Positions 8,621 through 63,244 of a stretch of 64,000 bases of DNA are shown here, piece after piece (positions within the stretch are counted from its first letter, which is position 1; each line of letters starts with the position of its first letter). Position numbers and translations under genes: made by a program. The stretch covers positions 186,001 to 250,000 of IMG/VR virus record IMGVR_UViG_3300023296_000874, one strand, 5' to 3'. The notes under the pieces are model-generated. The model searched no databases and was not told the DNA's origin. It saw only the letters and a program-made list of their open reading frames with translations.

Positions 8621-9205
8621 CTACGGATGCTCAGCGAGTTCTCCGGGTACCACGCCTGACGCCAGCACAATCTTGCAGATGTGCTCGACGCGCTCAATGT
8701 GCTCAAAGGCTTCCCACGGGTCAGCTCCAGTTGCTGTGACGCCGTGGTTCTTCTGACCCACGATGTCACACCTGCCCAAGAAGGACTCGTAGGTGGCGTC
8801 CCCAAGCGCGGCAGAGATGGCCGGTAGGAAGGGCACTGTCGCCCCAATGCGCGTGTAGCGGAACAGCTCAGGGAAGTGGTTCTGCAACACGCGGAGGTCA
8901 AAACCCCGGAACATTGCGGCCACTGTGTACGTCGGGTGTGCGTGGACAACCGCTGTAGCCCCGCCACGGTGTTGCAGGAGGAAGTGCATGTGCAACTCCC
9001 CTGAAGGCTTCCCGGTAGCGACAACGGGCGCGTCAGCTTCCACAAGCACCGGGACAAGGTCGCCCTCCAAGATGAACTGCTTCCGCACGCCTGATGGAGT
9101 GATCAGGAAGCCTTCATCGGACGTGATTGAGACATTCCCATCCCGTGTAGATATCCAACCGAGTCGGTATAGTTCGGCCATCACTTCGCAAGTAGCTGCC
9201 TTCAT
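8621..9205 (-). CDS. Class II aldolase/adducin family (FucA/Ald2-like)
   Basis: DGNVS, LITPSG, KPSGELHMH, VVHAHP, NHGV; GGAGG RBS favours ATG at 9205. Confidence 0.85.
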   Translation of the reverse strand: MKAATCEVMAELYRLGWISTRDGNVSITSDEGFLITPSGVRKQFILEGDLVPVLVEADAPVVATGKPSGELHMHFLLQHRGGATAVVHAHPTYTVAAMFRGFDLRVLQNHFPELFRYTRIGATVPFLPAISAALGDATYESFLGRCDIVGQKNHGVTATGADPWEAFEHIERVEHICKIVLASGVVPGELAEHP

Positions 9206-9235
9206 TTCGGTTCCCTCCAGAATGCTATTCGAGAC

Positions 9236-9251
9236 GCACAAACGGATCATG
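9236..9251 (-). promoter_or_regulatory. Conserved 16-bp motif (putative late promoter)
   Basis: gcacaaacggatcatg, 31 nt upstream of the aldolase start. Confidence 0.6.
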
Positions 9252-13596: not shown

Positions 13597-13612
13597 CTAC
13601 AAAAGCATCATG
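13597..13612 (-). promoter_or_regulatory. Conserved 16-bp motif (putative late promoter, variant)
   Basis: ctacaaaagcatcatg; overlaps the CCA-gene TGA. Confidence 0.55.
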
Positions 13613-34509: not shown

Positions 34510-34839
34510 TCATCTCTTCTTCATCCACGGGTACTTTCTATGTACCCCTCTGCTGCGCTGTCGCTTTCTGTATCTCTTAGTCGAAGGCTTGCGCTCAATA
34601 CGCTCCCGCCTACGCTTGTACTTCTTGCCCGCTGGTGTACGCGTCCATCGCCTGCGCTTTCTGCGCTCGTTCGACGGCTTGCGACGCCAGCGTGTCTTCC
34701 TCCGAATGCCACGGCGCTTGCCTGCATCGGATCGAGGTTTCTTTGCCGTCACATCGCTCGCCAACTCCATCATTTCCGTGCCCAGCTCGATGCTGTGCAT
34801 GGCAAGACGGATGGCGAGGCTGGTCAGGCATACTTTCAC
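34510..34839 (-). CDS. Protamine-like very basic protein
   Basis: 41 of the last 77 residues are K/R; GTG overlaps the protease TGA; fills the gap to the next promoter. Confidence 0.6.
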   Translation of the reverse strand: MKVCLTSLAIRLAMHSIELGTEMMELASDVTAKKPRSDAGKRRGIRRKTRWRRKPSNERRKRRRWTRTPAGKKYKRRRERIERKPSTKRYRKRQRSRGVHRKYPWMKKR

Positions 34840-40147: not shown

Positions 40148-41752
40148 TCAGAAGCGCTCTTCCCCCGCGCTCTCCTTGATTTTCAGTCCAAGGTGCTCAA
40201 CGACGATATCCAGAAGGTTGGATTTCTCCGCGAGCTGTCCGCCAATGTCACCCAAGGCGTTTCGAATCGCCTCGTTGAAGTTGGCGTCATTGAGCGTGAA
40301 TGCATCGCGCTGGAGCTTCTCTTCCACGTCAGCAGCGTCGATGTTGAAGAGGTCGAGGATGAAGCTCACGGGCAAGCTTCCCTTCTGGTACAGGTCGAAC
40401 AGGGCGCTGAAGACGTCCTGGTTGTCGGCCAGTGCCATACGGTTGAAGCTCAGGCGCGGGTAGATGGGCTTGTCGTATCCCCACGCATCCTTCTCCACGA
40501 ATCCCATCTTGATTGCTACGGGCTTGAAGAGGAAGTCCTCAACGTACTCCTGAACCATCATGCGGTAGTTCATGAAGCGCTCGTTCATGACGTGCAGGCT
40601 CAACCGGTTGCCGGTGAACGTACCTTCGCCAGTGAGCAGCTCGAGCGTCACGCCAAGGCCAACCATGAGCTGACGGTCCGTGATGTCGTACTCGTTGCTC
40701 AGGTCAAGCAGGCGGTCGTTGCTACCGTACTCTTCCCAGTTCACCTGGTAGTTGGCAACAATGGAGAAGTCAGGGTCCATCAGGGCAAGGTCCACCATCT
40801 CGCGGAGCTCATCAACCTGCATTTCGTCAAGCCCCTCTCCCCACACGACGCGCTTCGGGGTCATGTTGCGGCTTGCGATACTTGTCTGAGCCTGACGTAG
40901 CTTGTCGCGGTACAGCAACACGCGCAGGCACCGTTCCAAAATGGAGGAGCCAAACTTGCTGCGAGGCCTACGCCTACGAGCAAGGTGGTAGCAGAAAGAG
41001 CCCTGCATGGGATCGGAGTCCAGGGGGAGGTTCTCTCCCATCTGGATGTACTCCACGATCTCGGGCGGCATCTTCTCAACCTTGCGCATGGCAAGGGGGT
41101 CAACCTGGGCGTCACGCACGGCGCGACGGTCTTCTTCCGAGGGTACGAACTCGATGTCTACTTCGTCGGAGAAGCTGTAGCCCTTGACGTCAACCTGATC
41201 GGTCTCAAGGATGGTGAGCTTGCGCCACCCACGGTAGTCTTCGCCTTCCTTGTCATCGTCCTCAGCGAAGATGAAGACGTTGCCGTCCAACCAGTAGAGG
41301 TGCGTGATCTCGTGCAGGCGTCGTGTGAGCCTGAGATCATCCACCATCTTCTGAAAGTAGGCCATCACCTTGTCAGCGGTCTCCTTGTCCTCACATTTCG
41401 GCTTGGAGAGGCGGACCTTGCTCAAGGGGATCTCGGTCAGGATGTCGAGTGCCTGCCCAACCATGGGGTCAGTCTCGTAGTAGTGCCTGAACCACTCGTG
41501 CTTCTCACGGTCACTCTGAGGCAGCTCGAGGAAGTCCGTGCTGAGCTGAGGGCTGAAGAAGTTGAATCCAGAGCTCTGGATTACACCACCACCCGGAGCA
41601 CCAACACGAGTGTTGAACTGTACGCCATTGGTGGAGCGGGCAACACGCTTCAGACGTCGAGCGATGACTTGATCATTGCCACGTCGGGAGATTGTGGGTC
41701 CGGGTGCCGGAGCACCAGATCCACTACTTTCGTTGTTGTTGTCGTCAGGCAT
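40148..41752 (-). CDS. Portal protein
   Basis: 534 aa between TerL and protease; YYETDPMVGQALDI, YWLDGNVFI, GSSILERCLR.L...DKLRQAQ.SIA.R..TP, GLGVT..LL.GEG. Confidence 0.85.
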   Translation of the reverse strand: MPDDNNNESSGSGAPAPGPTISRRGNDQVIARRLKRVARSTNGVQFNTRVGAPGGGVIQSSGFNFFSPQLSTDFLELPQSDREKHEWFRHYYETDPMVGQALDILTEIPLSKVRLSKPKCEDKETADKVMAYFQKMVDDLRLTRRLHEITHLYWLDGNVFIFAEDDDKEGEDYRGWRKLTILETDQVDVKGYSFSDEVDIEFVPSEEDRRAVRDAQVDPLAMRKVEKMPPEIVEYIQMGENLPLDSDPMQGSFCYHLARRRRPRSKFGSSILERCLRVLLYRDKLRQAQTSIASRNMTPKRVVWGEGLDEMQVDELREMVDLALMDPDFSIVANYQVNWEEYGSNDRLLDLSNEYDITDRQLMVGLGVTLELLTGEGTFTGNRLSLHVMNERFMNYRMMVQEYVEDFLFKPVAIKMGFVEKDAWGYDKPIYPRLSFNRMALADNQDVFSALFDLYQKGSLPVSFILDLFNIDAADVEEKLQRDAFTLNDANFNEAIRNALGDIGGQLAEKSNLLDIVVEHLGLKIKESAGEERF

Positions 41753-43658: not shown

Positions 43659-45470
43659 TCAAAAGAACTTGCGCTTGCGCACGTACATGTTCTTGCGTGC
43701 TTTCTTGAGCTGGTGCGAACGGTGTGTGGAGTAGCCCTTGCCGTTCCCACGTAGTCCGGGGTTCCGGTTGCTCATGCCGTGAACCACTCGAGCGAACTTC
43801 TTGTCGCCAATGCGTTCCTGAGCGAGCCAAATGGCGCGGGCCAGGGCGTCAGCCTGATCGTCGAACCTGCCAGGCAGGTTGGGAGCAGCCACCTCAATCT
43901 GGTACTTGCTGAGGCGCTTCTCCTGAAGGCTGAGCAGCTCTTTGATGTAGTCGCAGTGCTCGTCCCCCTCTTCAATGGGCCAATCGAACAGGCGGATCTT
44001 CTTGTCGAGCATCAGGAGCTTGAAGGCTTGGTACTTCTTGGAGTTCTTGTCGCGGCTGGCGTACTCCATCTCAAACTGCTGGAGTCCGCGCTTGCGGAGT
44101 GCCTGCTCAAGAGGAAGGCCTTCTCGCTGGTCAAAGGAGCCGCGCCAGATGTAGAACTTCTTGCTCAGATCGAAGATCCACTGCGCAATACTCTCGAAGT
44201 CAAGCTGGTCCATGTCCTTGTAGGGGCCAACGCCAGCGTACCGAACGTCCATGTAGTCGAGTACGATCTGGTCGCCCTCAAGATGTACGATGGAGATCGC
44301 CGTACCGTTGTTGACAAGCCCGATGTCAACGCCCATGAAGTGAGGTACGCGAGTAGCGCCGCCACCACGGGGTCGGAGGTCAGGGTCGATGCACTGGAGC
44401 AGGTCGTCTTCCCTGCGGATCCAACCGTGGAGTCGGTCGGAGAACTCAGCTCCGAACTCAACGAGGAAGTTGGCGGGGTCTTCCTTGTACTTCTTGCGGA
44501 GGTACTTACCTGCAATCGTGGGGTTGATCTCCCACGAAGGTGCCTGGATGCAGAGGCGTCCTTCAGAGCGGCCCTCCATTCCCTGCGTGAACAGCTTGTA
44601 GAACTTCCCGGCCTTGTTGAGCGGCGAGGAGATGCAGATCACCTTTCCCTCAGGCTCGCCCGTTTTGGGGTCCTTGAAGGTAGCCGTCGAAGGCGTTGCG
44701 GCCTCGTAGCACTCTTCAGCGGAGCTCTGGCCCTCTGCCACGAAGTGAGCAAACTCGTCGAACACGCATACGATGTTGGCGGGTCCACGGAGGCCTCGTC
44801 CAATAGCCGGACGGAACAGGAGCTCGATGGATCCCTTGGCGTCCGGGCCGTAGCGGTCAATGTCGGCCTGGGTACGGAACACCATGCCTTCAGCGGTGTC
44901 ACTGGCAATGAACGGCTCGAAATAGCGGCACTTCGTCAGGTAGCCGCGCGCCACGTTGTAGAGCATGGAAGCCTGGCGGGCGCTGGTTGCTACAGCACTG
45001 ATGCTGATGCGGCCCACTTCGAGCATCTTGTAGTGGTCGTGCGGATTCACGCGGGCAAGGAGCTTGTAGATCTCGTAGGCGCAGATCATCGAGGTCATTG
45101 CTGACTTAGAGCCACGGCGTCCAACCGACAGGAGGAGGTCGGTGTAGATCTCGCCCTGCTCCTTGACGTTGCAGCGCCCCTCGTTGTGAAGGTAGCGGAG
45201 GAACTCCTTCTCGCTGAGCTCGTACTTCAGTTCCATCATGAACTGGTCGTGTACGGGAATGCCGTGGAAGAGCTTTCCGTCGAGCATCACCTCAGGCTTC
45301 TCAATGCTGAGAGGTACGCCGTAGAACAGCTTGAGTAGCCAACGCTGAGCGGGCCAGAGTCGAGTGTTGAGTCCCCAGGTTGACTCGCAGAACGTGACGA
45401 TGTCAACGAAGTCCTCGTTGTCCTTGTCAGGCTTGCTGAACTCCTGGAGGATGGAGGTAACTGTGTTCAT
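43659..45470 (-). CDS. terL: Terminase large subunit
   Basis: LWPAQ (Q motif), VGRRGSKS (Walker A), CVFDEFAHF (Walker B), ISSP, FMGVDIG and DDQADA nuclease acidic residues. Confidence 0.92.
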   Translation of the reverse strand: MNTVTSILQEFSKPDKDNEDFVDIVTFCESTWGLNTRLWPAQRWLLKLFYGVPLSIEKPEVMLDGKLFHGIPVHDQFMMELKYELSEKEFLRYLHNEGRCNVKEQGEIYTDLLLSVGRRGSKSAMTSMICAYEIYKLLARVNPHDHYKMLEVGRISISAVATSARQASMLYNVARGYLTKCRYFEPFIASDTAEGMVFRTQADIDRYGPDAKGSIELLFRPAIGRGLRGPANIVCVFDEFAHFVAEGQSSAEECYEAATPSTATFKDPKTGEPEGKVICISSPLNKAGKFYKLFTQGMEGRSEGRLCIQAPSWEINPTIAGKYLRKKYKEDPANFLVEFGAEFSDRLHGWIRREDDLLQCIDPDLRPRGGGATRVPHFMGVDIGLVNNGTAISIVHLEGDQIVLDYMDVRYAGVGPYKDMDQLDFESIAQWIFDLSKKFYIWRGSFDQREGLPLEQALRKRGLQQFEMEYASRDKNSKKYQAFKLLMLDKKIRLFDWPIEEGDEHCDYIKELLSLQEKRLSKYQIEVAAPNLPGRFDDQADALARAIWLAQERIGDKKFARVVHGMSNRNPGLRGNGKGYSTHRSHQLKKARKNMYVRKRKFF

Positions 45471-51090: not shown

Positions 51091-51915
51091 TCAGTAGTTG
51101 AGTACGTCGCCCTCGTAGAGGCGCTCAATGACGTCCTGGCCGTCTGCATCCTTGGTGAGCTTCCAGAGGTCCCGGTCGCACTTGTGGATCAGCATGTCGT
51201 TCCCTACGCGAAGGAACTGAGTCAGATCGCCGAAGGCCACCTTGCGCATCGAGCCGGTCCGTACCTTGCTGCTCGCCTGCTTCTTGATCTCAACCGCGCG
51301 CCGCCCAATGTTGCTCTCCTTGAACTCAAGCTTCTGCTGGAGCAGGTACGTGTGGGAGTCGTGGCTGTTGGCAAGAGCCTGGATGAAGTCGTCCAGTCCG
51401 AGAGGCATCACGCCGGAGGTCTTCAGGCTGTCGTACACCGTCTGAGCGGCCTTCTGGAAGTCCTCTTCGGCCTGTAGGGCGCGGCGGAAGGGGCATTCGA
51501 TCTGCTCCCAACGGGAAACCCAATCCATAGCCACTCGGAGCAGAAGCACCGGCTCGAGTACTTGTGCGCCAAGGTAGCCAGCAGTCTTCTCGGCAAGGCC
51601 ATCAATCTCAAGCGTTGTGTTCTCGTAGAGGCGCTGGAACATCAGATGGTCGCCGTAGAAGCCATCCGATCCAACCTGCCAGTGTGCGTGGCGGTAGATC
51701 CAGTCCTGGGCACGTAGTAGGCCCAAAAGTCCAATCATGCTGGAGCCGAGTACACGGAGCTGATCCTCCGAGCCGCTGATGTAGGCAGTCTTCCCCTCGG
51801 TCTTGCCGCCAAGGAAGGTGTCGAATGCGGGATTGGAGAATGCGTCGTGGATACCCGTGGCGTCCGTCTTCATCTCAGCAATCGCCGCCTGTAGGTCGCG
51901 ATAGATGTCGTTCAT
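51091..51915 (-). CDS. Dps/ferritin-like domain protein with C-terminal extension
   Basis: HAHWQV...FYGDHLMFQRLYE....IDGLAEK ... GLDDFI.....H....YLL = Dps ferroxidase pattern. Confidence 0.75.
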   Translation of the reverse strand: MNDIYRDLQAAIAEMKTDATGIHDAFSNPAFDTFLGGKTEGKTAYISGSEDQLRVLGSSMIGLLGLLRAQDWIYRHAHWQVGSDGFYGDHLMFQRLYENTTLEIDGLAEKTAGYLGAQVLEPVLLLRVAMDWVSRWEQIECPFRRALQAEEDFQKAAQTVYDSLKTSGVMPLGLDDFIQALANSHDSHTYLLQQKLEFKESNIGRRAVEIKKQASSKVRTGSMRKVAFGDLTQFLRVGNDMLIHKCDRDLWKLTKDADGQDVIERLYEGDVLNY

Positions 51916-51954
51916 GAATGGCTCCACGAGAGGTGATACGTCAGAGGTGCAGGT

Positions 51955-51970
51955 CTACAAATGGAATATG
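51955..51970 (-). promoter_or_regulatory. Conserved 16-bp motif (putative late promoter of the packaging operon)
   Basis: ctacaaatggaatatg, 40 nt upstream of 51915. Confidence 0.7.
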
Positions 51971-52022
51971 ACGGCTTGACTTCTCTGAGTATCTGGTTGT
52001 TTGAGGCGTTAGGGAGAGCAGA

Positions 52023-52646
52023 ATGTACGACCTTGTATTCGCCATGCTGTTCGAGGAGGAGCCCACGCTCGAGTGGAAGAGCGGACCGGATTTCGTGAAT
52101 GGATGGTGGTTCCAAGGCTGGCCTCCTACAGAGAGCCCGGCCATACGACGTCACGGCTGGCACTTCGCAGACCCCGTACAGGGACATGCTGCTTGTGGCA
52201 GTAGCGGAGGGGTGAGGCACAGCGCACCCTTCCCCGGCGTAGAGCACAGCTCAGGGCTCTTCGGCTTTGGGGTACGCGAGCGACACCTCGCGTTATGCGA
52301 CATGTGTGAGGCATCTGCTAAAGGATGGATGTCAGAAATCCCCATCATGGACATGCCGGACCAAGCGAAGCTCCTGAAGCCTTCAAGGGCTTACTGGATG
52401 GTGCAATCAAACCTGTGTCGTGCCGCCTACATCCTCAACCGGATAGAGGTAACTGACATCTGGTACCCTTCGGTGCGTGATCATCTGCGAGCCGTCCTCG
52501 AGCCGATTTCGGAAGACCTTTTCAGAGACGCCTCCTCCGATAGAAAGGCGTCTAACGGGTATCACGGATACGACAGCGAGATGAAAATAGACCGCGACCA
52601 TCAGCGCCTGTGGAACCTCATCACCCAGCGCCTGGAGAACTCATGA
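52023..52646 (+). CDS. Hypothetical protein
   Basis: GGAG RBS; ATGA overlap with nadD. Confidence 0.5.
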   Translation: MYDLVFAMLFEEEPTLEWKSGPDFVNGWWFQGWPPTESPAIRRHGWHFADPVQGHAACGSSGGVRHSAPFPGVEHSSGLFGFGVRERHLALCDMCEASAKGWMSEIPIMDMPDQAKLLKPSRAYWMVQSNLCRAAYILNRIEVTDIWYPSVRDHLRAVLEPISEDLFRDASSDRKASNGYHGYDSEMKIDRDHQRLWNLITQRLENS

Positions 52647-53278
52647 GTACCGCCCTTGACGCCCGCACCGATCCAGCTACCAAGAAGCGCGTAGCTCTGA
52701 TTGGGGGCTCCTTCCACCCGCCCACTCTGGACCACGGCAACGTCGGACAGGAGCTGCTGCGGTTGGGCCTCGTGGATGAGGTGTGGTACGTCCCTTCAGC
52801 CAACCACCCCTTCGCCGCTACTCAGGACAAGAAGAAGAACATGCTGCCGATTGAGGATCGCGGTGAGATGTTGTGGAGTATGATCTCCAAGTTCCCTGAG
52901 AAGGACCAGATGAGCGTCACGTTCATCGAGCAGACGGCAGACCTCAGCGGCTACACCTGGGAAACCGTCGCGGCCTTGAAGGCGCAGTACGGACATGACT
53001 TCTACTGGGTGATGGGTACCGACTGCGTAGATGACTTGTCCAAGTGGAGCAAGGTGCCCTGGTTGCTTGAGAACGTGACCTTCATCGTGTACCCGCGTGG
53101 TGGCTACCCTGATGGCATCGGCGGGTACTGGACCCCGCTCAGGGCCGAGCATGTGGTGATTGCACGCGAAGACGTGAAGGAGACCTCCGGCAGCAGCTCG
53201 GAGGCTCGCGAGAACCCTGATGGTGGACTGCTTGACGTTGACGTCGCTACCTTCTGGAAGGGGAAGCACTCCGTTTAG
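52643..53278 (+). CDS. nadD: Nicotinate/nicotinamide mononucleotide adenylyltransferase
   Basis: GGSFHPPTLDH (T/HxGH-like), VWYVPS..HPF, YTWETV..L, WVMGTD..DL.KW. Confidence 0.85.
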   Translation: MSTALDARTDPATKKRVALIGGSFHPPTLDHGNVGQELLRLGLVDEVWYVPSANHPFAATQDKKKNMLPIEDRGEMLWSMISKFPEKDQMSVTFIEQTADLSGYTWETVAALKAQYGHDFYWVMGTDCVDDLSKWSKVPWLLENVTFIVYPRGGYPDGIGGYWTPLRAEHVVIAREDVKETSGSSSEARENPDGGLLDVDVATFWKGKHSV

Positions 53279-53323
53279 CCCTCGCTGCCAAATTCCGGTG
53301 TCCATCGAGGCATCGGAGGCAGC

Positions 53324-53971
53324 ATGGATTACTTGGCAATCGACCACCCCACACGCGAGCTCATCTGCGGGTTGTGTAGGCAGTTCTACACGTTGGGTTG
53401 GGCATCGGGTACGGGCGGCGGCATTGCCATCAAGCACCCGACCCTCGACCAGATTCTTGTAGCTCCGTCCGGAGTTCAGAAGGAGCGGCTCCACCGCTCT
53501 GACCTGTTCGTGGTCAACCTTGAGGGCGAGGTTCTTCAATCTCCCCTGAACCCTACGCTGACGTTGAGCCAGTGCTGGCCCCTGTTCCAGCACGCCTTCG
53601 TGAAGCGCGGTGCGGGTGCCATCATCCACTCGCACCAGCAGAGTGCCGTACTGGCAAGCCTCTACACGGGCGTCGGGCGGTTTGAGCTCCGGGGTGATTT
53701 CTGTGAGATGGTGAAGGGCTTGCGTGGCAAAGGCTACCATGACTCCGTCGTCATCCCGGTCATCAACAACACGGCCCACGAATGTGACCTTGCAGACAGC
53801 CTCGGTGACGCCATGGATAGGCACCCGGACGTGGATGCGGTCCTTGTGCGGAGCCACGGCATCTATGTCTGGGGTTCTTCTTGGCAACAGGCAAAAACGC
53901 AGGCAGAGTGCTTTGACTACCTCTTCAAACTTTACGACAGGCTGAACAGCCGCGATTGGAATGGAATATGA
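53324..53971 (+). CDS. mtnB: Methylthioribulose-1-phosphate dehydratase (APIP/Mde1-like)
   Basis: GWASGTGGGIAIK, APSGVQKER, SQC.PLF, AIIHSH, PVINNT..E.DL, VLVRSHGIYVWG.SW..AKTQAECFDYLF. Confidence 0.93.
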   Translation: MDYLAIDHPTRELICGLCRQFYTLGWASGTGGGIAIKHPTLDQILVAPSGVQKERLHRSDLFVVNLEGEVLQSPLNPTLTLSQCWPLFQHAFVKRGAGAIIHSHQQSAVLASLYTGVGRFELRGDFCEMVKGLRGKGYHDSVVIPVINNTAHECDLADSLGDAMDRHPDVDAVLVRSHGIYVWGSSWQQAKTQAECFDYLFKLYDRLNSRDWNGI

Positions 53972-54432
53972 GAGACCTACAGTGGATTGAATGCAACCGA
54001 GGCGAGCTGACTGCTGGCGTGGTTGTGGCGAACGGAATCGGATACCAGTACGTTGAGGACGAGTTCGACTCGGCCTTGGACAAGGTGGCGTCCGACAACG
54101 GGTACATCCAGCGTGACATGGTGGCACTGAACTCCAGCACCGACGGGCTTGACCCCTTGCTGCAGAAGTTCTTCGAAGAGCATCGCCATGACGAGGACGA
54201 GGTACGCTTCGTGGTGGAAGGTGAGGGCACCTTTGACATCCGAGATGCAGACAACAGTACTGACGGATGGATGCGAGTCACCGTAGAGAAGGGTGACCTG
54301 GTTGTGGTTCCTGCTGGGCGCTACCACCGCTTCGCACTGACGGAGAGTCAGGACATCAAGGCAGTCCGCTTGTTCAAGCGTGCTGAGGGCTGGAAGGCTG
54401 AGTTTCGTCAAGTCGAACTGCCCTTCTCGTAA
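53968..54432 (+). CDS. mtnD: Acireductone dioxygenase
   Basis: FFEEHRHDEDEVRFVVEGEGTFDIRD, GDLVVVPAGRYHRF; ATGA overlap with mtnB. Confidence 0.93.
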   Translation: MRDLQWIECNRGELTAGVVVANGIGYQYVEDEFDSALDKVASDNGYIQRDMVALNSSTDGLDPLLQKFFEEHRHDEDEVRFVVEGEGTFDIRDADNSTDGWMRVTVEKGDLVVVPAGRYHRFALTESQDIKAVRLFKRAEGWKAEFRQVELPFS

Positions 54433-54468
54433 GTTCAGAGTGTCTCTCTTCCCAAAGGGAGCCACGTC

Positions 54469-54807
54469 ATGAGTTTGAGCATCAGTACCGAAGTCCGCAC
54501 CACCCACTCCATTGACGAAGAGGAAATGGAGAGAGTGCTCAAGGAGTACTTCGGCAAGGACGTGTCCTACGACTCTTCGGACGTTGGCGGCGACGAAAGC
54601 GGCGGCACCCTTGAGGTTGACCTCAACGAGGACACCCTCTCCAAGAGCTACGCCGCCTCGCTCGAGAGCGTCAAGCGTGACCTCGAGGCGCACCGAGAGT
54701 CCAAATGGGGCATCCAGTTCAGCGCGATTGATGAGTACCTCCAGGTGGAGGTGCAAGAGGGGCGTTTGCCCTACGGCTACTACCGGATCGAATTCTGCTG
54801 GGGATAG
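54469..54807 (+). CDS. Acidic hypothetical protein
   Basis: GGGAG RBS. Confidence 0.6.
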   Translation: MSLSISTEVRTTHSIDEEEMERVLKEYFGKDVSYDSSDVGGDESGGTLEVDLNEDTLSKSYAASLESVKRDLEAHRESKWGIQFSAIDEYLQVEVQEGRLPYGYYRIEFCWG

Positions 54808-54865
54808 CCTCTGAGTCTGTGCCGCCCTCACCGCGTTGAGGTAGTACAGCAAGGAGGCTCAGACA

Positions 54866-55051
54866 GTGACCAAACGACCCGATCCAGACCTAACCGTTGA
54901 AGTTGACGCGCGGGAACCCGCACCACGAGAAGACATCGAAGTCAACATGGCGGGAAGCCTGATTGATGAGTTGGTGAGGAACCCGCCGCCCAAGACTCCC
55001 TCTGAGGATCCGGGTGATGATCTCGTTGTACTCCTGAAGCCCAAGGAGTAG
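54866..55051 (+). CDS. Small hypothetical protein
   Basis: AAGGAGG RBS before GTG. Confidence 0.5.
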   Translation: MTKRPDPDLTVEVDAREPAPREDIEVNMAGSLIDELVRNPPPKTPSEDPGDDLVVLLKPKE

Positions 55052-55055
55052 CATC

Positions 55056-56300
55056 ATGGCAAAAACCGGCAGAACCCGTGGAGCACGCAGCGGACGCACC
55101 GTCAAGGTGGTTGGCGTCTGGGAATGCGACTCGTGCGGCAACAAGTACCCAGGCACAACTCGCGAGTGTCCCCGTGGTTGCGGGAGCCCCCGTGAGTTGG
55201 AGGAGCTCCAGAAGCTCGCTCTGCCTGATGGACCTCTCAAGGCGGCTTCAGCAGCAGACACAGCGGACTTGAGCCACGGACAGGACAAGCACTGCCCCTA
55301 CTGCGGACGCGGAATGCGTGCCGACAACACCAACTGCGGTTCATGTGTGGGTAGCCTCGAGGAGGCTTCAACCTCACGGCCCGAGAGCGCGCCTGTGCGT
55401 AGCGCCTCTCCTCCACCCCCACGCCGGGCCACTACTCCTCCCCCCGTACCGACTCCGCGCCACAGCGCACCGAGAGCCGGTGGTGGCAAGCGCCACCTCT
55501 CCTACATCCAGCGCCCCGGTGGACCTGATCCGAGCAGTGGTGGAGGTGATGACGGAGGCTTCGGACGCATCTTCGCGGGCCTCGGAATTGTGATGGCGAT
55601 CATCGCCTTCATTGGCCTGCTTGTGTGGGGCTTCACGGCTCACGAGGTGGACGGACAGGTTGCATCTTTGACCGGCACCTCCACGGCTCAGGAGTACAAC
55701 TGGACGCAACGTAGCGACTCGGATTGGGCGCGCAACCTCCGTGACTCGAGCAGCTACTCCCCTTCCAACGGGAAGAACTCCGGCGAGCGTGCGGGTGAGG
55801 ACGTCGGCTACTGCCGCATGAAGGAAGACCCGAGCGACACCTACGTGTGTGGCACGACCACTCAAACGGTGCCCGACGTGTGCGTGTGGGTAGACACCAC
55901 GAGCATCGACCAGAGCTCCTGTACAGATGACGGTGCTGGGGGGTTCAACTGCGGCTACATCCAAGCGGAGGATTGCACGGCTCAGCCTGACATCATCGTG
56001 GATGTGATGTGCAACCGAGAGCATCGGTACTGCGACTACACGTACTACGCCTGGGCAAGCGGGACCAACCACAGAGTGACCTTCACCGGCCACACCATCA
56101 ACGATCCGACCGCCCGGACCAGCGGCACGCGCCATGTGGACTCCCCGCGCCGGATTTACACGGTGGGCGTGAGCTACATGGATGGTGCCGAGGTTGGATC
56201 AGGCTCCATCAACGTAGAACGCGCCGACTACCTGAACAGGAACGTTGGAGACACCGTACCTGTGATGCTCAACAACTTCGGCAGCGTTAGCTTCCAGTAG
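55056..56300 (+). CDS. Membrane protein: cytoplasmic double Zn-ribbon, Pro linker, TM helix, Cys-rich external domain
   Basis: WECDSC...CPRGC, HCPYC...CGSC; IFAGLGIVMAIIAFIGLLVWGF; multiple C-terminal Cys. Confidence 0.7.
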   Translation: MAKTGRTRGARSGRTVKVVGVWECDSCGNKYPGTTRECPRGCGSPRELEELQKLALPDGPLKAASAADTADLSHGQDKHCPYCGRGMRADNTNCGSCVGSLEEASTSRPESAPVRSASPPPPRRATTPPPVPTPRHSAPRAGGGKRHLSYIQRPGGPDPSSGGGDDGGFGRIFAGLGIVMAIIAFIGLLVWGFTAHEVDGQVASLTGTSTAQEYNWTQRSDSDWARNLRDSSSYSPSNGKNSGERAGEDVGYCRMKEDPSDTYVCGTTTQTVPDVCVWVDTTSIDQSSCTDDGAGGFNCGYIQAEDCTAQPDIIVDVMCNREHRYCDYTYYAWASGTNHRVTFTGHTINDPTARTSGTRHVDSPRRIYTVGVSYMDGAEVGSGSINVERADYLNRNVGDTVPVMLNNFGSVSFQ

Positions 56301-56307
56301 GACAGAC

Positions 56308-57435
56308 ATGGAACCCGTAACGATCATCCTTCTCACCATCGGCGGCATCGGCTCCCTCCTCGCGGCGGGAGCGGGTGGTGTAGCGGTGGGCGTAGCTGGG
56401 GCAAAAGCCTCAATGCCCGAGCCCGAGCCCGTGGACTCTGACCCGGTTGGGGCCATCCGTCTTCAGGAAGACCTCGACTACGCCCAGCGTCGGTTGGCGG
56501 ATGCTCATGAAGACCTGGCGCGTGCCGGGGGTGACCGGGACCGCTACAGGACGATGGCTGAATCTCACGACATTCACATGCCGGAGGTAGCCGAGACTCA
56601 GATGGTGGAACGGAGCGTGTGGAAAGACCGCCGCTACCGTGCCCACCCACGAGACATCCTCACCAACCTCGCAACGGACCTGGAGGAGTACGCAGGATCT
56701 GACCTCACGCTCACCATCTCCATCTCAGGCAAGGGTGGCTGGGCAGACCATCTCAAGGAGCGATGGTTCAAGACCGAGAGCCAGCGTGATCGCTACGGGC
56801 ACTACAAGGAAGTGAAGGTGCCCATCAAGGAGATCAAGGGATTCACCTTCGAGGGACCGCCAGACCGAGTGATCGACCACCTCCGCACCCTCCTCACGGA
56901 TGACGACACGGGCCTCGTGACCGTTGCGGCGGTTGACTGTATGGACACTGCGTCAGGCTCCGACCGATTCGTAGGCCCGACCGACAAGATTGCCCTCGCG
57001 GGCAAGCCTTCCGCCAGGAAGGCGACCGTGGTGCCTCAGGCGAAGTTCTGGAGGGACTCCGACTCCCCGCTCCTCGTGAAGGCGAAGCTCACCGTGCGCG
57101 AAGAGGTGAAATCCCCACCCGCGCCGGAGGTGCAGATCGTTGAGGTGCTGGTGGTTCAGGAGCGCATTGTGGAGCGCATCGTTGAGAAGCCGGTGATTGT
57201 GGCCGTGCCCTCCGGTACGGAGCAGGACTTGTGCGGCCACACCCGCGAGGAGATCTCAGACCTCATCTCCGTAGAGCTTGAGCTTGCTCAGCTTGAGGGC
57301 GGACTCAAGCGAGTAGCGACGGCCTCACTCGCAAGAGCGGAGGCCGAAGTAGAGGCGGCACGCCCGGCTGATGATGTAGACGAGAGGCTCAGGAGGGCTC
57401 GGGCAGCGTCCCTTGCTCGGCAGCCTGGATCCTGA
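56308..57435 (+). CDS. N-terminally anchored membrane protein with coiled coils
   Basis: Hydrophobic N-terminus; heptad segments. Confidence 0.6.
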   Translation: MEPVTIILLTIGGIGSLLAAGAGGVAVGVAGAKASMPEPEPVDSDPVGAIRLQEDLDYAQRRLADAHEDLARAGGDRDRYRTMAESHDIHMPEVAETQMVERSVWKDRRYRAHPRDILTNLATDLEEYAGSDLTLTISISGKGGWADHLKERWFKTESQRDRYGHYKEVKVPIKEIKGFTFEGPPDRVIDHLRTLLTDDDTGLVTVAAVDCMDTASGSDRFVGPTDKIALAGKPSARKATVVPQAKFWRDSDSPLLVKAKLTVREEVKSPPAPEVQIVEVLVVQERIVERIVEKPVIVAVPSGTEQDLCGHTREEISDLISVELELAQLEGGLKRVATASLARAEAEVEAARPADDVDERLRRARAASLARQPGS

Positions 57436-58015
57436 TGAGTAGATCCGGCGTGTAGCGATCCGCCAACAGCAAGGAGGCGGAAGGCAACGCGCGGGTTTCA
57501 GCCTGGAGCTGCTCCTCATCATCCATGAGGATCGCGGCACGGCTGTGAACCGTAGGCCCGGATTCCACAACTGGGGGCTCGAGGTACGGCTCCGGGTTCG
57601 TGTTGGCGAGGCTCTGCCAGTGCGCCATGACTCCGGGGTGTACGCCGCTACGGGACTCGTCGATGAGTTCCTGAGCGCGCTCCTTCATCCACGGTGCCCA
57701 CGAGGCCTCGTACTCAGTCACCTTCTCCGCAGCAGTTCCGTACTGCGGATACATGAACTGGTCAGCGGAGAGGATGGCGAAAGGTCCCTTCAGGGAGCGG
57801 ACGCCACGCATGAAGCTCAGCCCGGCCCAACCCGCCTGGAAGCCGCTGTTACCCATCTGGCCCGCGCCGTAGTTGAACGCTGCCTGGGCAATGAGACCCA
57901 AGGCCGCTGCCGAGGTGTTGTAGTCGTGAGGGTGCTCGATGGCGCTCTTGACGTAGGCGAGGAATTCAGCCTCCGTCTCGGGCCACGGTGCAGGAGCTTC
58001 TGGGTCAAACGGCAT
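57389..58015 (-). CDS. Hypothetical protein
   Basis: GGAG RBS before ATG 58015; HDY.TS...SGFQAG pattern seen in phage hypotheticals. Confidence 0.6.
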   Translation of the reverse strand: MPFDPEAPAPWPETEAEFLAYVKSAIEHPHDYNTSAAALGLIAQAAFNYGAGQMGNSGFQAGWAGLSFMRGVRSLKGPFAILSADQFMYPQYGTAAEKVTEYEASWAPWMKERAQELIDESRSGVHPGVMAHWQSLANTNPEPYLEPPVVESGPTVHSRAAILMDDEEQLQAETRALPSASLLLADRYTPDLLIRIQAAEQGTLPEPS

Positions 58016-58065: not shown

Positions 58066-58632
58066 TCACCTTTCGAGAGCTACCTTCTTGCCGTGGTTGC
58101 GCTCATCCTTCACCCAACGCCAGAAGCGTCCGATGGGGAACGCTTTGTGCTCACCCTCGCGGTAGAAGCCCGGTCGAGGGTAGTGCTTCTTGTAGGCCCC
58201 GATGGCTTCCTCTACAGAGTCGAAGCCGATCATCACCTTGTCCTCATCGAACCCGCCGTCAGGCATGTGCTGGTGAATGACAAGCACGAGTGAGCTGTCG
58301 TGGTTGGGGCCAACGTACACGTCAAGCAGGTCGCCGTCTGTGGCCTCTGTCCCCCTGATCTCGCCGTAGTGGTGGTGCATGTAGCGCCTCCACTTCTTGC
58401 CTTCAGGGTTGGTCTTCTCGCGGTACTGTCCGGCCTTGACCTCAATGTCAATCTCAAGCCCTTGGAAGTCCACGTAGCCAACGAACGGCTTCTTCTTGGC
58501 TGGCTCGACCTTCACCTTGTGGAACGAGTGCGGCACCTCAACGATGCCATCGTCAGAGGCTACACGCGCGGGACTCAGACGCATCCGAGCCGCCACGTTC
58601 GCAAGGTGGTTGATTGTGTCCTGGGTTACCAT
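58066..58632 (-). CDS. InPase-domain (inorganic pyrophosphatase-like) protein
   Basis: GLEIDIE..AG..R....GKKW...M..HYGEI.GT...DGD.LDVYVGP ... FDEDKVMIGF.S.EEA..AY. Confidence 0.75.
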   Translation of the reverse strand: MVTQDTINHLANVAARMRLSPARVASDDGIVEVPHSFHKVKVEPAKKKPFVGYVDFQGLEIDIEVKAGQYREKTNPEGKKWRRYMHHHYGEIRGTEATDGDLLDVYVGPNHDSSLVLVIHQHMPDGGFDEDKVMIGFDSVEEAIGAYKKHYPRPGFYREGEHKAFPIGRFWRWVKDERNHGKKVALER

Positions 58633-61469: not shown

Positions 61470-61485
61470 CCACAAAAGGATTATG
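61470..61485 (-). promoter_or_regulatory. Conserved 16-bp motif (putative late promoter)
   Basis: ccacaaaaggattatg, 26 nt upstream of 61444; contains the asnB TAA. Confidence 0.7.
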
Positions 61486-63244
61486 TCTGGTTTTCAAGCC
61501 ACGCGGCGAACACAAACAGTGTCCAACAGAAGAGCGTGAGGTCCTTGTTGCCAGCGTAGTATTGATTGATGATGAGGTCGATGCGCCTCATGTCCAGGAA
61601 CGCCCCGAGGTTGCGAAATCTCTGAGAGTGAATCGCTCTTTTGAACCCTTCCTTGAAGGGTCCTCGGAGCAGTGCGTCAGTAGGTACGGTGAACCCCATC
61701 TTTGGGCGTCGGGTGATGTCGGATGACACTCCGAAGCTCTCTGCCACGTCCTTGAGGATGCGCTTGGTGGTGCCGTTGTACTTGAACTCGTCGGGAAGTC
61801 GAACCACGTACTCCATCAGATCACGGTCCAAGAACGGCACCCGAGCCTCCACTGACGCTCCCATGGTCATCTTGTCCACCTTCATGAGCAGATCATCAGG
61901 AAGCCAGGTGAGCGTGTCCATTCGAGTGATCCTCGACTGGAGGGTCGTGTTCGCGTAGTCGTTCCAGATGGTCGGCATACGAGTCAGCGGGTTGTGATGG
62001 CGCGTCACGTCTGAGGTCACAATTCCCTTGCGGTCCAGGAAGTAGTTGGAGCGCTCCAAATGGTCAAGCATCGCGGGCATACCCACGTCGTTGACGTCCC
62101 GAGCCTTCAAGATGCTGTCGTACTGCCAGTAGCCCGCGAAGATCTCGTCAGCTCCCTCACCGCTGAGCATCACCGTGCATCCACGCTTCGCGATCCGGCT
62201 GAGGTGGAGCGTGGGGAAACAGGCCGCGTCTGAAAGCGGCTGGTCCATGTGATTGAGCACGTCAGGTAGGATGTTGACCATGTCGTCAAACGTCATGCCG
62301 CACTGGAAGTAGTTGAGGCCAAGCTCTCGGGCGACTCCACCCGCGTAGCCGTACTCGTTGGCGTTGGGGTAGCCCACGTTGTAGACGTTGATGTCAGTGC
62401 CCAGCTCTTTGGCAGCAACGGCGCAGATTACAGAGCTGTCGACCCCACCACTCAGGAAGGCTCCGAGAGGTACCTCGCTCTGGAGGCGTCTACGCACTGC
62501 TTGAATGAGGAGCTCGCGCGTCCGGCCCACAGCGTTCTCGTAGGTGTCAGGGTGGACGGTCTGGTCCATGGTCCACCACCGGTCAATCTTGAGCTCGCGG
62601 GTCCGGAGGTCATAGACCATGTGGTGCCCTGGCGGGAGGGCGTGGATTCCTCTCCAGATGGTGTCAGGTCCGGGGATGTACCGGAAGGTGAAGTAGTCCG
62701 CAATCGCGTTGGGGTTGATGCCAAAGCCTGGGTAGGCGGACGTGATGGCCTTGATCTCAGAGCCGAAGGCGAAGCGGTTGCCGTCCAACGTGTAGTAGAG
62801 AGGCTTGATGCCAACGTGGTCCCTGGCCAGGAACAGAAGCTTCGCCCTCTTGTCGAAGATGCTGAAAGCGAACATGCCTCGGAGCCTGTGAAGGAATCCG
62901 AAGCCGTGCTGTTCGTAGAGGTGGACCAGTACCTCGGTGTCGCTATTGGTCTTGAAGACGTGGCCCTGGCTCTCCAACTCAACCTTCAGACTGCCGTAGT
63001 TGTAGATCTCGCCGTTGAACACCACTTCAACGTTCCCGTCCTCGCTGGAGATGGGCTGCTTTCCTCCACTACGGTCGATGATCGCCAGCCGGTCAATGCC
63101 GTAGCCGATGGTCTGACCGAGGGACCTCCGGGTGACCCAGTTCTGATCATCAGGTCCACGGTGTGAGATGGACGTTGCCATCTTCGCGAGTTTGCCGTCG
63201 AGGGAGACGTTTCCGTTCTCGACCATTCCGAAAATACCACACAT
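61481..63244 (-). CDS. asnB: Asparagine synthetase (glutamine-hydrolysing) family amidotransferase
   Basis: N-terminal MCGI, HRGPD, VFNGEIYNY, SDTEV, LARD..GIKPLYY, FLSGGVDSS, LSGEGADEIFAGY. Confidence 0.93.
   Translation of the reverse strand: MCGIFGMVENGNVSLDGKLAKMATSISHRGPDDQNWVTRRSLGQTIGYGIDRLAIIDRSGGKQPISSEDGNVEVVFNGEIYNYGSLKVELESQGHVFKTNSDTEVLVHLYEQHGFGFLHRLRGMFAFSIFDKRAKLLFLARDHVGIKPLYYTLDGNRFAFGSEIKAITSAYPGFGINPNAIADYFTFRYIPGPDTIWRGIHALPPGHHMVYDLRTRELKIDRWWTMDQTVHPDTYENAVGRTRELLIQAVRRRLQSEVPLGAFLSGGVDSSVICAVAAKELGTDINVYNVGYPNANEYGYAGGVARELGLNYFQCGMTFDDMVNILPDVLNHMDQPLSDAACFPTLHLSRIAKRGCTVMLSGEGADEIFAGYWQYDSILKARDVNDVGMPAMLDHLERSNYFLDRKGIVTSDVTRHHNPLTRMPTIWNDYANTTLQSRITRMDTLTWLPDDLLMKVDKMTMGASVEARVPFLDRDLMEYVVRLPDEFKYNGTTKRILKDVAESFGVSSDITRRPKMGFTVPTDALLRGPFKEGFKRAIHSQRFRNLGAFLDMRRIDLIINQYYAGNKDLTLFCWTLFVFAAWLENQT

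What the first reader, a model, noticed from the sequence alone, without database searches (positions are those of the whole stretch)
53324..54432. Phage-borne methionine-salvage pair mtnB-mtnD of the APIP/ADI1 type
Seen: translationally coupled MtnB and MtnD, both intact. Their motifs (GTGGGI, SQC.PLF, F.EEH.H..DE.R...G.G.FD.RD) match the eukaryote-like APIP/ADI1 subtypes rather than the Bacillus type. The intervening enolase-phosphatase (MtnC) is not here. Established: the pathway recycles MTA from polyamine synthesis or SAM cleavage, and ARD gives the Met precursor with Fe2+ or releases CO with Ni2+. Inference: it supports high SAM flux (DNA or virion modification, polyamines) or clears MTA made by an anti-restriction SAM lyase. 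I do not know of this pair as a described phage AMG.
Basis: partly seen in the sequence, partly recalled or inferred. Interest (0 to 1): 0.7.

Follow-up and report, generated by a model that had tools for sequence, protein, structure and literature searches.

The report
Phage-borne methionine-salvage gene pair mtnB-mtnD
A giant salt-lake phage really does carry two intact, selected genes of the pathway that recycles methylthioadenosine back to methionine, copied as a ready-made two-gene cassette from Myxococcota-like bacteria: a new but not revolutionary kind of metabolic gene for a phage.

Summary
Window 53324-53971 (+) encodes a 215-aa MtnB (TIGR03328, 181 bits against a cut-off of 137; best solved relative human APIP). 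Window 53968-54432 (+) encodes a 154-aa acireductone dioxygenase, MtnD (Pfam ARD, 124 bits). The two overlap by ATGA. The contig is a 257.5-kb IMG/VR jumbo myovirus from salt-lake metagenomes, with portal and terminase genes about 8 kb away. It is not host contamination. The block NMNAT-mtnB-mtnD sits in the same conserved backbone in two related phage lineages, one on a 478-kb contig. Independent samples assemble across it. Natural SNPs are 10 synonymous to 0 non-synonymous in mtnB. "Eukaryote-like" is misleading. The nearest relatives (50-59% identity) are Myxococcota, where the same bicistron (APIP-type MtnB plus a short ARD) is the usual arrangement, and 23 of 40 MtnB-bearing genomes lack MtnC. 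The phage MtnBs nest inside a Myxococcota clade. Most likely it is an auxiliary metabolic pair that turns host-made MTRu-1-P into the keto-acid precursor of methionine.

The parts
53324..53971 (+). mtnB: methylthioribulose-1-phosphate dehydratase, 215 aa, APIP type
   Evidence: TIGR03328 181 bits against cut-off 137; Pfam Aldolase_II E 1e-35. Human APIP 4m6r is the best solved match: E 1e-57, and TM 0.88 at 46% identity for the AF2 model (pLDDT 91). The three zinc histidines H102, H104, H178, plus E128 and C84, are invariant in 16 homologues.
53968..54432 (+). mtnD: acireductone dioxygenase (ARD), short 154-aa form
   Evidence: Pfam ARD 124 bits, matching profile positions 48-157 of 157. The metal ligands H72, H74, E78, H120 are invariant. 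AF2 model pLDDT 90; best PDB matches are human ADI1 (TMq 0.79) and B. anthracis ARD (0.77).
53968..53971 (+). ATGA start/stop overlap of mtnB and mtnD (translational coupling)
   Evidence: Read from the sequence. The same 4-nt overlap occurs in the phage relative L016 and in Haliangium ochraceum.
53315..53319 (+). GGAGG Shine-Dalgarno-like site 4 nt upstream of the mtnB ATG
   Evidence: Sequence. This is a consensus match only.
52610..53278 (+). NMN/NaMN adenylyltransferase-like gene (CTP_transf_like), the conserved upstream neighbour of the pair
   Evidence: Pfam PF01467 E 7e-11; TIGR00482 87.6 bits, below its cut-off of 112. It holds the same position in L013, L014 and L016, at 39-60% identity.
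52023..52646 (+). 207-aa ORF of unknown function, first gene of the + strand block 52023-57435
   Evidence: No Pfam hit. 30% identical to the ORF at the same place in L016. The Atlas search gave only weak leads.
40148..41752 (-). portal protein (context: shows the locus lies in a phage)
   Evidence: phrog_16240, E 1.5e-35.
43659..45470 (-). terminase large subunit-like gene (context)
   Evidence: phrog_17415 E 2e-9 and phrog_9 E 1e-6. 69% identical to the syntenic gene in the 478-kb relative L013.

Best explanation
A jumbo myovirus from a salt lake carries a host-derived auxiliary metabolic cassette. SHOWN: mtnB and mtnD are intact, overlap by ATGA, keep every catalytic and metal-binding residue, and fold as APIP and ARD. 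They lie in the conserved backbone of a small phage clade next to an NMNAT-like gene and are under purifying selection. The phage MtnBs form one clade nested among Myxococcota MtnBs. In those bacteria the same two-gene unit, without MtnC, is the usual arrangement. INFERRED: an ancestor of this phage clade took the whole bicistron from a Myxococcota-like bacterium. In infected cells MtnB dehydrates host-made 5-methylthioribulose-1-phosphate, and MtnD (Fe form) oxidises the acireductone to 2-keto-4-methylthiobutyrate plus formate. A host transaminase then turns that keto acid into methionine. The missing enolase-phosphatase step would be covered as in the donor bacteria and in Tetrahymena: enolisation by MtnB itself or spontaneously, and dephosphorylation by an unspecific host phosphatase. 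The benefit would be recovery of reduced sulfur and methionine (and so SAM) from host MTA during phage production. In a host that has MtnA but no MtnB/MtnD, the pair would install the missing oxygen-dependent half of the pathway.
For: Identity of the enzymes. Phage context: tail sheath, baseplate and tape-measure genes; portal, terminase-like and head protease genes 8-19 kb upstream in the window; an IMG/VR virus record. Not a chimera: the 478-kb contig L013 is syntenic across window 43.6-61 kb, including NMNAT-mtnB-mtnD, and L016 carries the same block. Contigs from independent salt-lake runs bridge backbone to mtnB and mtnB to mtnD to downstream genes. GC3 is 0.74 and 0.71 against a genome mean of 0.75 +/- 0.06. 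Selection: population SNPs are 10 synonymous to 0 non-synonymous in mtnB, and 4 to 2 in mtnD. dN/dS is 0.05-0.14 for mtnB and 0.22-0.32 for mtnD. Origin: the best 80 genome hits are almost all Myxococcota, and 68 of 80 have mtnD directly downstream. The three phage MtnBs are monophyletic (SH-aLRT 99) inside a Myxococcota-plus-unlabelled-MAG clade (support 96). Working without MtnC: 0 of 80 loci have an MtnC-like neighbour. Five large genomes with the cassette have no TIGR01691 match. In a sample of 151 Myxococcota, 40 have MtnB, only 17 of those have MtnC, none has a true MtnW, and 133 have MtnA. SpeE is a recurrent neighbour of the bacterial cassette, in 11 of 80 loci, which ties it to MTA production. 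Precedent: the MtnB domain of Tetrahymena MtnBD does dehydration and enolisation, and the phosphatase is external (PMC3698126).
Against: No enzyme activity, expression data or host is known. The record is about 81% complete, so mtnC, mtnA or an MTA-producing gene could sit in the missing fifth. MtnD evolves fast in the phages (46-49% identity between them, long branches), which could mean a shifted role. Its placement in the tree is unresolved, so co-transfer with mtnB rests on gene order, not on the MtnD tree. The MtnB tree is a quick search with SH-aLRT support only. Complex prediction for MtnB with MtnD gave no answer. Host assignment failed: GlnRS relatives are spread over several phyla.
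Confidence: 0.6

Rival explanations
1. Host contamination or a chimeric assembly: the pair belongs to a bacterial genome and was joined to phage DNA by the assembler.
For: The only GenBank 'phage' with mtnB-mtnD(-mtnC), Microcystis phage MaAM05/PhiMa05, has them in a region full of bacterial housekeeping genes. Its status as an intact virus is disputed (PMC13623518). The contig has no terminal repeat.
Against: The same block sits in the same backbone in two other phage lineages at 69-77% MtnB identity. Independent samples assemble across the junctions. Portal and terminase-like genes lie 8-13 kb away. Composition matches the phage genome and not the nearest bacterial loci, which have 51-75% GC. 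The nearest cellular homologue is only 59% identical.
Confidence: 0.03
2. One reading: the pair serves a phage-driven SAM economy. It would recycle MTA made by phage polyamine synthesis, aminocarboxypropyl or other SAM-consuming modification, or an anti-restriction SAM lyase.
For: MTA is the pathway's input by established biochemistry. About 19% of the genome is missing. SAM lyases are too divergent for a single-sequence search to exclude.
Against: No SpeE, SpeD, MetK, DTW, N6/N4 or C5 DNA methyltransferase, MtnN/MtnP or MtnA was found in the held 257.5 kb. There was no hit to T3 SAM lyase by tblastn or phmmer. The one radical-SAM gene yields 5'-deoxyadenosine, not MTA. MtnB and MtnD act three steps downstream of MTA and cannot clear it on their own.
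Confidence: 0.12
3. A role other than methionine recovery. One option is ARD working off-pathway (Ni or Co form) to release CO, formate and methylthiopropionate. Another is the pair acting on related sugar phosphates, such as 5-deoxy-ribulose-1-phosphate from radical-SAM waste, or removing reactive intermediates.
For: ARD chemistry depends on the bound metal (established for Klebsiella ARD). MtnD is the fast-evolving partner, and the three phage copies share a 3-residue insertion. Lone ARD genes without mtnB occur in two other huge-phage contigs. The genome has two further class II aldolase domains and a radical-SAM gene.
Against: MtnB passes the curated equivalog cut-off and is the most conserved gene of the block. 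The pair is inherited as the same unit that bacteria link to spermidine synthase. All four ARD ligands are kept.
Confidence: 0.15
4. A neutral passenger: a recently captured host fragment with no function for the phage.
For: Jumbo phages collect many cellular genes. This one also has GlnRS, LysRS, AsnB and others.
Against: The pair is retained across three phage lineages that diverged to dS above 1. dN/dS is well below 1, mtnB has 10 synonymous and 0 non-synonymous SNPs, and composition is fully ameliorated. The phage MtnB clade has a long stem of its own.
Confidence: 0.05

Closest known systems
Myxococcota mtnB-mtnD bicistron (e.g. Haliangium ochraceum, Haliangium sp., Sandaracinaceae and Nannocystaceae MAGs)
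   Same: Same gene order and same APIP-type MtnB followed by a short ARD of about 145-160 aa, often with a 4-nt overlap. There is no MtnC beside it and usually none in the genome. These are the nearest sequences, at 50-59% for MtnB and 45-59% for MtnD.
   Different: The bacterial version is chromosomal and sometimes lies next to spermidine synthase. The phage copies form their own long-stemmed clade, have phage-like composition, carry a 3-residue insertion in MtnD, and are preceded by an NMNAT-like gene.
Human APIP (PDB 4m6r) / MtnB family TIGR03328
   Same: 46% identity and TM 0.88. The zinc histidine triad is shown to be essential in APIP (PMC3532061), and the SQC and E-M-x-K-G motifs are kept.
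   Different: No eukaryotic origin is implied: the two eukaryote sequences in the tree sit elsewhere among bacteria. APIP's apoptosis-related roles are irrelevant here.
ADI1 / ARD (PDB 4qgn, 1vr3, 4qgl, 1zrr)
   Same: Cupin fold with TMq 0.77-0.79, and a 3-His-1-Glu metal site.
   Different: About 25 residues shorter. The N-terminal third does not match the Pfam profile. Eukaryotic, Bacillus and Klebsiella forms are about equally close.
Tetrahymena thermophila MtnBD fusion
   Same: MtnB and MtnD work as a unit in an organism without MtnC. There the MtnB domain does dehydration and enolisation, and the phosphatase is supplied from elsewhere (PMC3698126).
   Different: In the phage the two are separate polypeptides coupled only by an ATGA overlap. 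Bifunctionality of the phage MtnB is untested, and complex prediction gave no answer.
mtnB-mtnD-mtnC annotated in Microcystis phage MaAM05 / PhiMa05 (MW495066)
   Same: It is the only record among 50,697 GenBank phage records with relatives of both proteins.
   Different: Only 27% and 35% identical. It includes mtnC, is surrounded by bacterial housekeeping genes, and is not mentioned in the phage's paper. The record's viral status is contested.

Membership tests
MtnB, methylthioribulose-1-phosphate dehydratase (TIGR03328; class II aldolase fold) | Score above the curated equivalog cut-off | tested here: met
   181 bits against 137.05. The gammaproteobacterial and Bacillus-type models are far below their cut-offs (96 of 226; 88 of 281).
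MtnB, methylthioribulose-1-phosphate dehydratase (TIGR03328; class II aldolase fold) | Three zinc-binding histidines and the conserved Glu and Cys of the active site | tested here: met
   H102, H104, H178, E128 and C84 are invariant in 16 homologues and align with the APIP residues. The His triad is essential in APIP (PMC3532061).
MtnB, methylthioribulose-1-phosphate dehydratase (TIGR03328; class II aldolase fold) | Class II aldolase fold closest to a proven MtnB | tested here: met
   AF2 pLDDT 91.4. APIP 4m6r gives TM 0.88 and E 3e-27; the next best matches are generic aldolases at E 1e-15.
MtnB, methylthioribulose-1-phosphate dehydratase (TIGR03328; class II aldolase fold) | Dehydratase activity on MTRu-1-P | not testable with these tools
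   Needs an enzyme assay.
ARD / MtnD, acireductone dioxygenase (Pfam PF03079) | Score above the gathering threshold over the whole domain | tested here: met
   124 bits against 27, but only profile positions 48-157 match; the N-terminal third is divergent. No NCBIfam equivalog hit.
ARD / MtnD, acireductone dioxygenase (Pfam PF03079) | 3-His-1-Glu metal site in a cupin barrel | tested here: met
   H72, H74, E78 and H120 are invariant. AF2 pLDDT 90.3; TMq 0.79 to human ADI1 with Fe and methionine bound.
ARD / MtnD, acireductone dioxygenase (Pfam PF03079) | On-pathway (Fe) product KMTB rather than off-pathway CO | not testable with these tools
   Depends on the metal bound in vivo.
Complete aerobic methionine salvage pathway (MtnA, B, C or W/X, D, plus MtnN/K or MtnP) | Enolase-phosphatase MtnC, or MtnW plus MtnX, present | tested here: not met
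   No TIGR01691 match. The only HAD-like hit is a polynucleotide kinase-phosphatase. The genome is 81% complete.
Complete aerobic methionine salvage pathway (MtnA, B, C or W/X, D, plus MtnN/K or MtnP) | Upstream steps MtnA and MtnN/MtnP present | tested here: not met
   No IF-2B or PNP_UDP_1 match in the held genome. MtnK was not searched.
Phage auxiliary metabolic gene | Lies inside a viral genome between viral genes, not at a host junction | tested here: met
   Portal, terminase-like and protease genes lie upstream. Conserved phage genes lie on both sides in L013. The locus is 17 kb from the contig end.
Phage auxiliary metabolic gene | Kept in related phages and under purifying selection | tested here: met
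   Three lineages. SNPs are 10 synonymous to 0 non-synonymous, and dN/dS is 0.05-0.32.
Phage auxiliary metabolic gene | Expressed during infection and changing host metabolism | not tested
   All 17 runs listed as holding the locus are typed DNA. No search restricted to RNA was made, and no RNA run was examined.
Tetrahymena-type MtnBD | MtnB and MtnD fused in one polypeptide | tested here: not met
   Two ORFs in different frames with an ATGA overlap.
Tetrahymena-type MtnBD | MtnB also catalyses enolisation, making MtnC dispensable | not testable with these tools
   Suggested only by the absence of MtnC and MtnW in the donor-type genomes.

The most novel reading that the evidence does not exclude
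The cassette is a self-sufficient, MtnC-independent half-pathway. Its APIP-type MtnB would both dehydrate and enolise, as in Tetrahymena MtnBD, any phosphatase would finish the step, and the short ARD would make KMTB. The phage would use it to give a host that has only MtnA/MtnP the oxygen-dependent route from MTA to methionine. That would also mean that a large share of Myxococcota (23 of 40 MtnB-bearing genomes sampled) run an undescribed bacterial variant of the pathway.
Probability: 0.3. Interest if true: 0.65.

Novelty: new member of a known kind. Interest (0 to 1): 0.5.

Why it matters
Phage auxiliary metabolic genes show which host reactions limit virus production. A selected mtnB-mtnD pair would add recycling of sulfur and methionine from methylthioadenosine to that list. 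This would be for a jumbo phage that also carries two aminoacyl-tRNA synthetases, asparagine synthase and NAD-salvage genes, which suggests a general strategy of propping up amino-acid and cofactor supply. The work also exposes a side question in cellular biochemistry. Many Myxococcota, like the phage, have MtnB and MtnD but no recognisable enolase-phosphatase. The small phage proteins would therefore be convenient material to test whether APIP-type MtnB enzymes can do the enolase step themselves.

Tried and rejected
1. Megablast of 17 kb around the locus against GenBank phages found no match.

2. IMG/VR scans:
- Single-protein scans found nothing.
- With alignments, no other viral MtnB was found.
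- Four ARD hits came up. Two are lone genes in huge-phage fragments. One lies in a record IMG/VR classes as a provirus and was not examined further. One is a distant mtnB-mtnD-HAD set at a contig end that looks host-type.

3. Tail-sheath relatives L025 and L026 have no mtnB or ARD in the parts held, but those records are only 4% and 39% complete.

4. The JGI metagenome scan found only the phage's own contigs in the phage clade.

5. Searching the whole 478-kb relative was not possible.

6. Promoter and terminator scan of 51.7-57.7 kb found nothing.

7. Complex prediction for MtnB with MtnD gave no answer either way.

8. Host inference from GlnRS was unresolved: 52-57% identity to Desulfovibrionales, Myxococcota and Gammaproteobacteria alike.

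9. I tested whether the upstream 207-aa ORF or a downstream ORF could be the missing phosphatase. There was no Pfam hit, the Atlas leads were weak, and the ORF is not clearly conserved in L013.

10. The single HAD hit in the genome is a polynucleotide kinase-phosphatase, not MtnC.

11. The T3 SAM lyase search gave no hit, but it is a weak test.

12. MtnD phylogeny did not resolve the donor.
Full report
WHAT IS THERE. The window is bases 186001-250000 of a single 257,533-bp contig. The tools identify it as an IMG/VR virus record: linear, with a CheckV completeness of 81%. It has 59.5% GC, no tRNA gene and about 313 tightly packed ORFs.

At 53324-53971 (+) lies a 215-aa ORF, and at 53968-54432 (+) a 154-aa ORF. 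The stop TGA of the first (53969-53971) overlaps the ATG of the second (53968-53970), and a GGAGG sits 4 nt before the first ATG.

The first protein passes the curated equivalog model for methylthioribulose-1-phosphate dehydratase (TIGR03328, 181 bits, cut-off 137). It falls far short of the gammaproteobacterial and Bacillus-type models. The second matches Pfam ARD at 124 bits, but only over profile positions 48-157.

ARE THE ENZYMES INTACT? Against solved structures, MtnB hits human APIP at E 1e-57, while the next hit (Aquifex aq_1979) is at 1e-12. In an alignment of 16 homologues the zinc histidines (H102, H104, H178), E128 and C84 are invariant. The histidine triad is essential for APIP activity (PMC3532061). 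An AlphaFold2 model (pLDDT 91.4) superposes on APIP with TM 0.88.

MtnD keeps the 3-His-1-Glu site (H72, H74, E78, H120). Its model (pLDDT 90.3) matches human ADI1 (TMq 0.79), Bacillus anthracis ARD (0.77) and Klebsiella ARD. 'APIP type' is therefore well founded for MtnB. 'ADI1 rather than Bacillus type' is not resolved for MtnD.

IS IT REALLY ON A PHAGE? Yes, for four reasons.

- Hallmark genes. The genome encodes a tail sheath, baseplate wedge and hub, a tail spike and a tape-measure-like protein. In the window itself it encodes a portal (40148-41752), a terminase-large-subunit-like gene (43659-45470) and a head protease (34836-36323).
- Synteny. A 478-kb metagenome contig (L013) is syntenic with window 43.6-61 kb, gene by gene. 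The shared run includes the terminase-like gene (69% identity), the NMNAT-like gene (39%), MtnB (69%) and MtnD (49%), with further shared genes beyond. A third lineage (L016/L017) has NMNAT-(one extra ORF)-mtnB-mtnD, with MtnB at 77% identity.
- Independent assemblies. Seventeen salt-lake sequencing runs hold the stretch. Contigs from the source sample cover 51600-53922 and 53996-57500, linked by a two-allele 133-bp bubble. A contig from another sample spans 53552-57500 with 24 SNPs.
- Composition. GC3 of the two genes (0.74, 0.71) equals the genome mean (0.75 +/- 0.06). The nearest bacterial loci have 51-75% GC.

Host contamination is effectively excluded.

IS IT UNDER SELECTION? The SNPs seen in other samples are 10 synonymous to 0 non-synonymous in mtnB. 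In mtnD they are 4 to 2, and both replacements fall in the variable N-terminus. Between the three phage lineages dN/dS is 0.05-0.14 for mtnB, 0.22-0.32 for mtnD and 0.28-0.60 for the NMNAT-like gene. dS is saturated, so these values are rough. MtnD evolves much faster than MtnB in the phages (46-49% against 67-77% identity) and has a phage-specific 3-residue insertion.

WHERE DID IT COME FROM? Among 5.8 billion proteins, the named relatives of MtnB after the phage lineages are Myxococcota at 54-61%. In one genome per species, the best 80 loci are almost all Myxococcota: Sandaracinaceae, Nannocystaceae, Haliangium, Polyangiaceae and Bradymonadia. A few are Elusimicrobiota, FCPU426 and Acidobacteriota. 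In 68 of these 80 loci an ARD gene follows directly on the same strand. In Haliangium ochraceum the two genes overlap by 4 nt, as in the phage, and the ARD is 152 aa.

In a maximum-likelihood tree (quick search, SH-aLRT support) the three phage MtnBs form one clade (99) on a long stem. That clade sits inside a clade of Myxococcota and unlabelled MAGs (96). The two eukaryote sequences included sit elsewhere among bacteria. The MtnD tree groups the three phage copies (89) but cannot place them. The simplest reading is one ancient capture of the whole bicistron from a Myxococcota-like bacterium, followed by vertical descent in the phage clade. 'Eukaryote-like' describes the enzyme type, not its source.

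THE MISSING MtnC. The held phage genome has no MtnC, MtnA or MtnN/MtnP family member. Its only HAD-like hit is a polynucleotide kinase-phosphatase.

The donor-type bacteria look the same. None of the 80 loci has an MtnC-like neighbour (this tblastn test is weak). Five 5-10-Mb genomes with the cassette have no TIGR01691 match. In a sample of 151 Myxococcota genomes:

- 133 have MtnA;
- 40 have MtnB above the cut-off;
- only 17 of those 40 have MtnC;
- none has a true MtnW;
- only 2 of the 23 MtnC-less genomes have any RuBisCO-like protein.

Spermidine synthase is a recurrent neighbour of the bacterial cassette, in 11 of 80 loci, which ties it to MTA metabolism. There is an experimental precedent for MtnB plus MtnD without MtnC. 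In Tetrahymena MtnBD the MtnB domain dehydrates and enolises, MtnD oxygenates, and an outside phosphatase is needed (PMC3698126). The absence of mtnC is therefore a property of the cassette as it exists in nature, not a sign of a broken pathway.

WHAT IT MOST LIKELY DOES. Shown: two intact, selected, co-translated enzymes of the APIP and ARD families on a phage. Inferred: they take 5-methylthioribulose-1-phosphate made by host MtnP/MtnN-K and MtnA and convert it to 2-keto-4-methylthiobutyrate plus formate. The enolase step would be done by MtnB or occur spontaneously, and a host phosphatase would remove the phosphate. A host transaminase would then give methionine. That recovers reduced sulfur and methionine, and so SAM, during infection. 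Because only about a quarter of the sampled Myxococcota have MtnB while nearly all have MtnA, the phage may be supplying steps its host lacks. That is speculation, because the host is unknown: GlnRS relatives did not resolve it.

I found no SpeE, SpeD, MetK, DTW, N6/N4 or C5 DNA methylase and no similarity to T3 SAM lyase (a weak test). The one radical-SAM gene produces 5'-deoxyadenosine, not MTA. The idea is not excluded, because a fifth of the genome is missing and SAM lyases are divergent. It has no support here.

HOW NEW IS IT? Full-text searches found no paper describing phage mtnB or mtnD. Among 50,697 GenBank phage records only Microcystis phage MaAM05/PhiMa05 has relatives, annotated mtnB-mtnD-mtnC. 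They are 27-35% identical and lie among bacterial housekeeping genes. They are not mentioned in that phage's paper, and the record's viral status has been formally questioned (PMC13623518).

In IMG/VR and the JGI metagenomes the phage-clade MtnB occurs only in this phage. The two other lineages come from ENA and Logan assemblies. Lone ARD genes occur in two other huge-phage fragments. So this is a rare, lineage-specific auxiliary metabolic pair: a new member of a known kind. The enzymes are ordinary members of their families, and host-derived metabolic genes are usual in jumbo phages. The MtnC-less design shared with many Myxococcota is the part most worth an experiment.

LIMITS. There are no expression data, no activity data and no host. 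The genome is incomplete. The trees are quick searches. dS is saturated. The MtnC neighbour test by tblastn is weak. Complex prediction gave no answer.

Noticed in passing
window 5579-7189 (+); also genome 58817-60310 (-), outside the window (L005:2817-4310): The phage encodes a full-length glutaminyl-tRNA synthetase (TIGR00440, 624 bits) and a lysyl-tRNA synthetase (614 bits), yet ARAGORN finds no tRNA gene in the whole 257.5-kb record.
   Followed up: partly
window 8621-9250 (-); genome 11712-13259 (-) (L002): There are two further class II aldolase domains. One is a 209-aa FucA-like paralogue, 26% identical to MtnB, with the His motifs kept and no equivalog match. The other is an aldolase-like segment fused behind a CoaB-like (phosphopantothenate-cysteine ligase) domain. 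Their substrates are unknown. They could bear on 5-deoxy-sugar or related salvage.
   Followed up: partly
window 52610-53278 (+); genome 60437-62008 (-) (L005:4437-6008); genome 168044-170125 (-): An NMNAT-like gene sits directly upstream of mtnB and is conserved there in the relatives. A nicotinate/nicotinamide phosphoribosyltransferase-like gene and a Nudix domain lie elsewhere in the genome. This looks like a phage NAD+ salvage or reconstitution set. Why it is linked to mtnB-mtnD is unexplained.
   Followed up: partly
window 53893-54025: The source sample holds two alleles of a 133-bp stretch at the mtnB/mtnD junction that differ at 10 sites. The minor allele is the one fixed in another lake sample. 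This points to co-existing strains with a locally dense patch of mostly synonymous differences.
   Followed up: yes
window 13608-14822 (-), 58066-58632 (-), 61481-63244 (-): More cellular-type genes: a CCA-adding/PcnB-type nucleotidyltransferase, an inorganic pyrophosphatase (Pfam InPase) and a glutamine-dependent asparagine synthase (AsnB).
   Followed up: no
genome 120271-122741 (+) (L008:8271-10741): A CNNM/CBS (CorC-like) membrane protein lies two small ORFs upstream of a radical-SAM gene of unclear subtype, with weak similarity to viperin, MoaA and NrdG models.
   Followed up: no
L020:5851-6345 and L021:5890-6324 (IMG/VR contigs of 141 and 208 kb, 30% and 44% complete): Lone short ARD genes (about 50% identical to the phage MtnD) occur without mtnB nearby or in the held part of the record. 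In L021 the ARD is next to an NAD-kinase-like gene. ARD alone may have a use for huge phages.
   Followed up: partly
Myxococcota genomes G007-G161 (genome search sample): MtnA is nearly universal (133 of 151), but MtnB is present in only 40 and MtnC in 17. Of the MtnB-bearing genomes, 23 of 40 have no MtnC and none has a true MtnW. This suggests an undescribed MtnC-independent variant of methionine salvage in this phylum.
   Followed up: partly
L001 (MW495066 174456-191025): The mtnB-mtnD-mtnC of Microcystis phage MaAM05/PhiMa05 lie among metG, mtaB, zur, gabD and ycfH, a bacterial-looking neighbourhood. This is consistent with the published doubt that the record is an intact phage genome.
   Followed up: partly
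window 53977-54852 (-): A 291-aa antisense ORF covers mtnD and the next gene. A naive longest-ORF gene call picks it instead of mtnD. It has no family match and is a high-GC artefact.
   Followed up: yes
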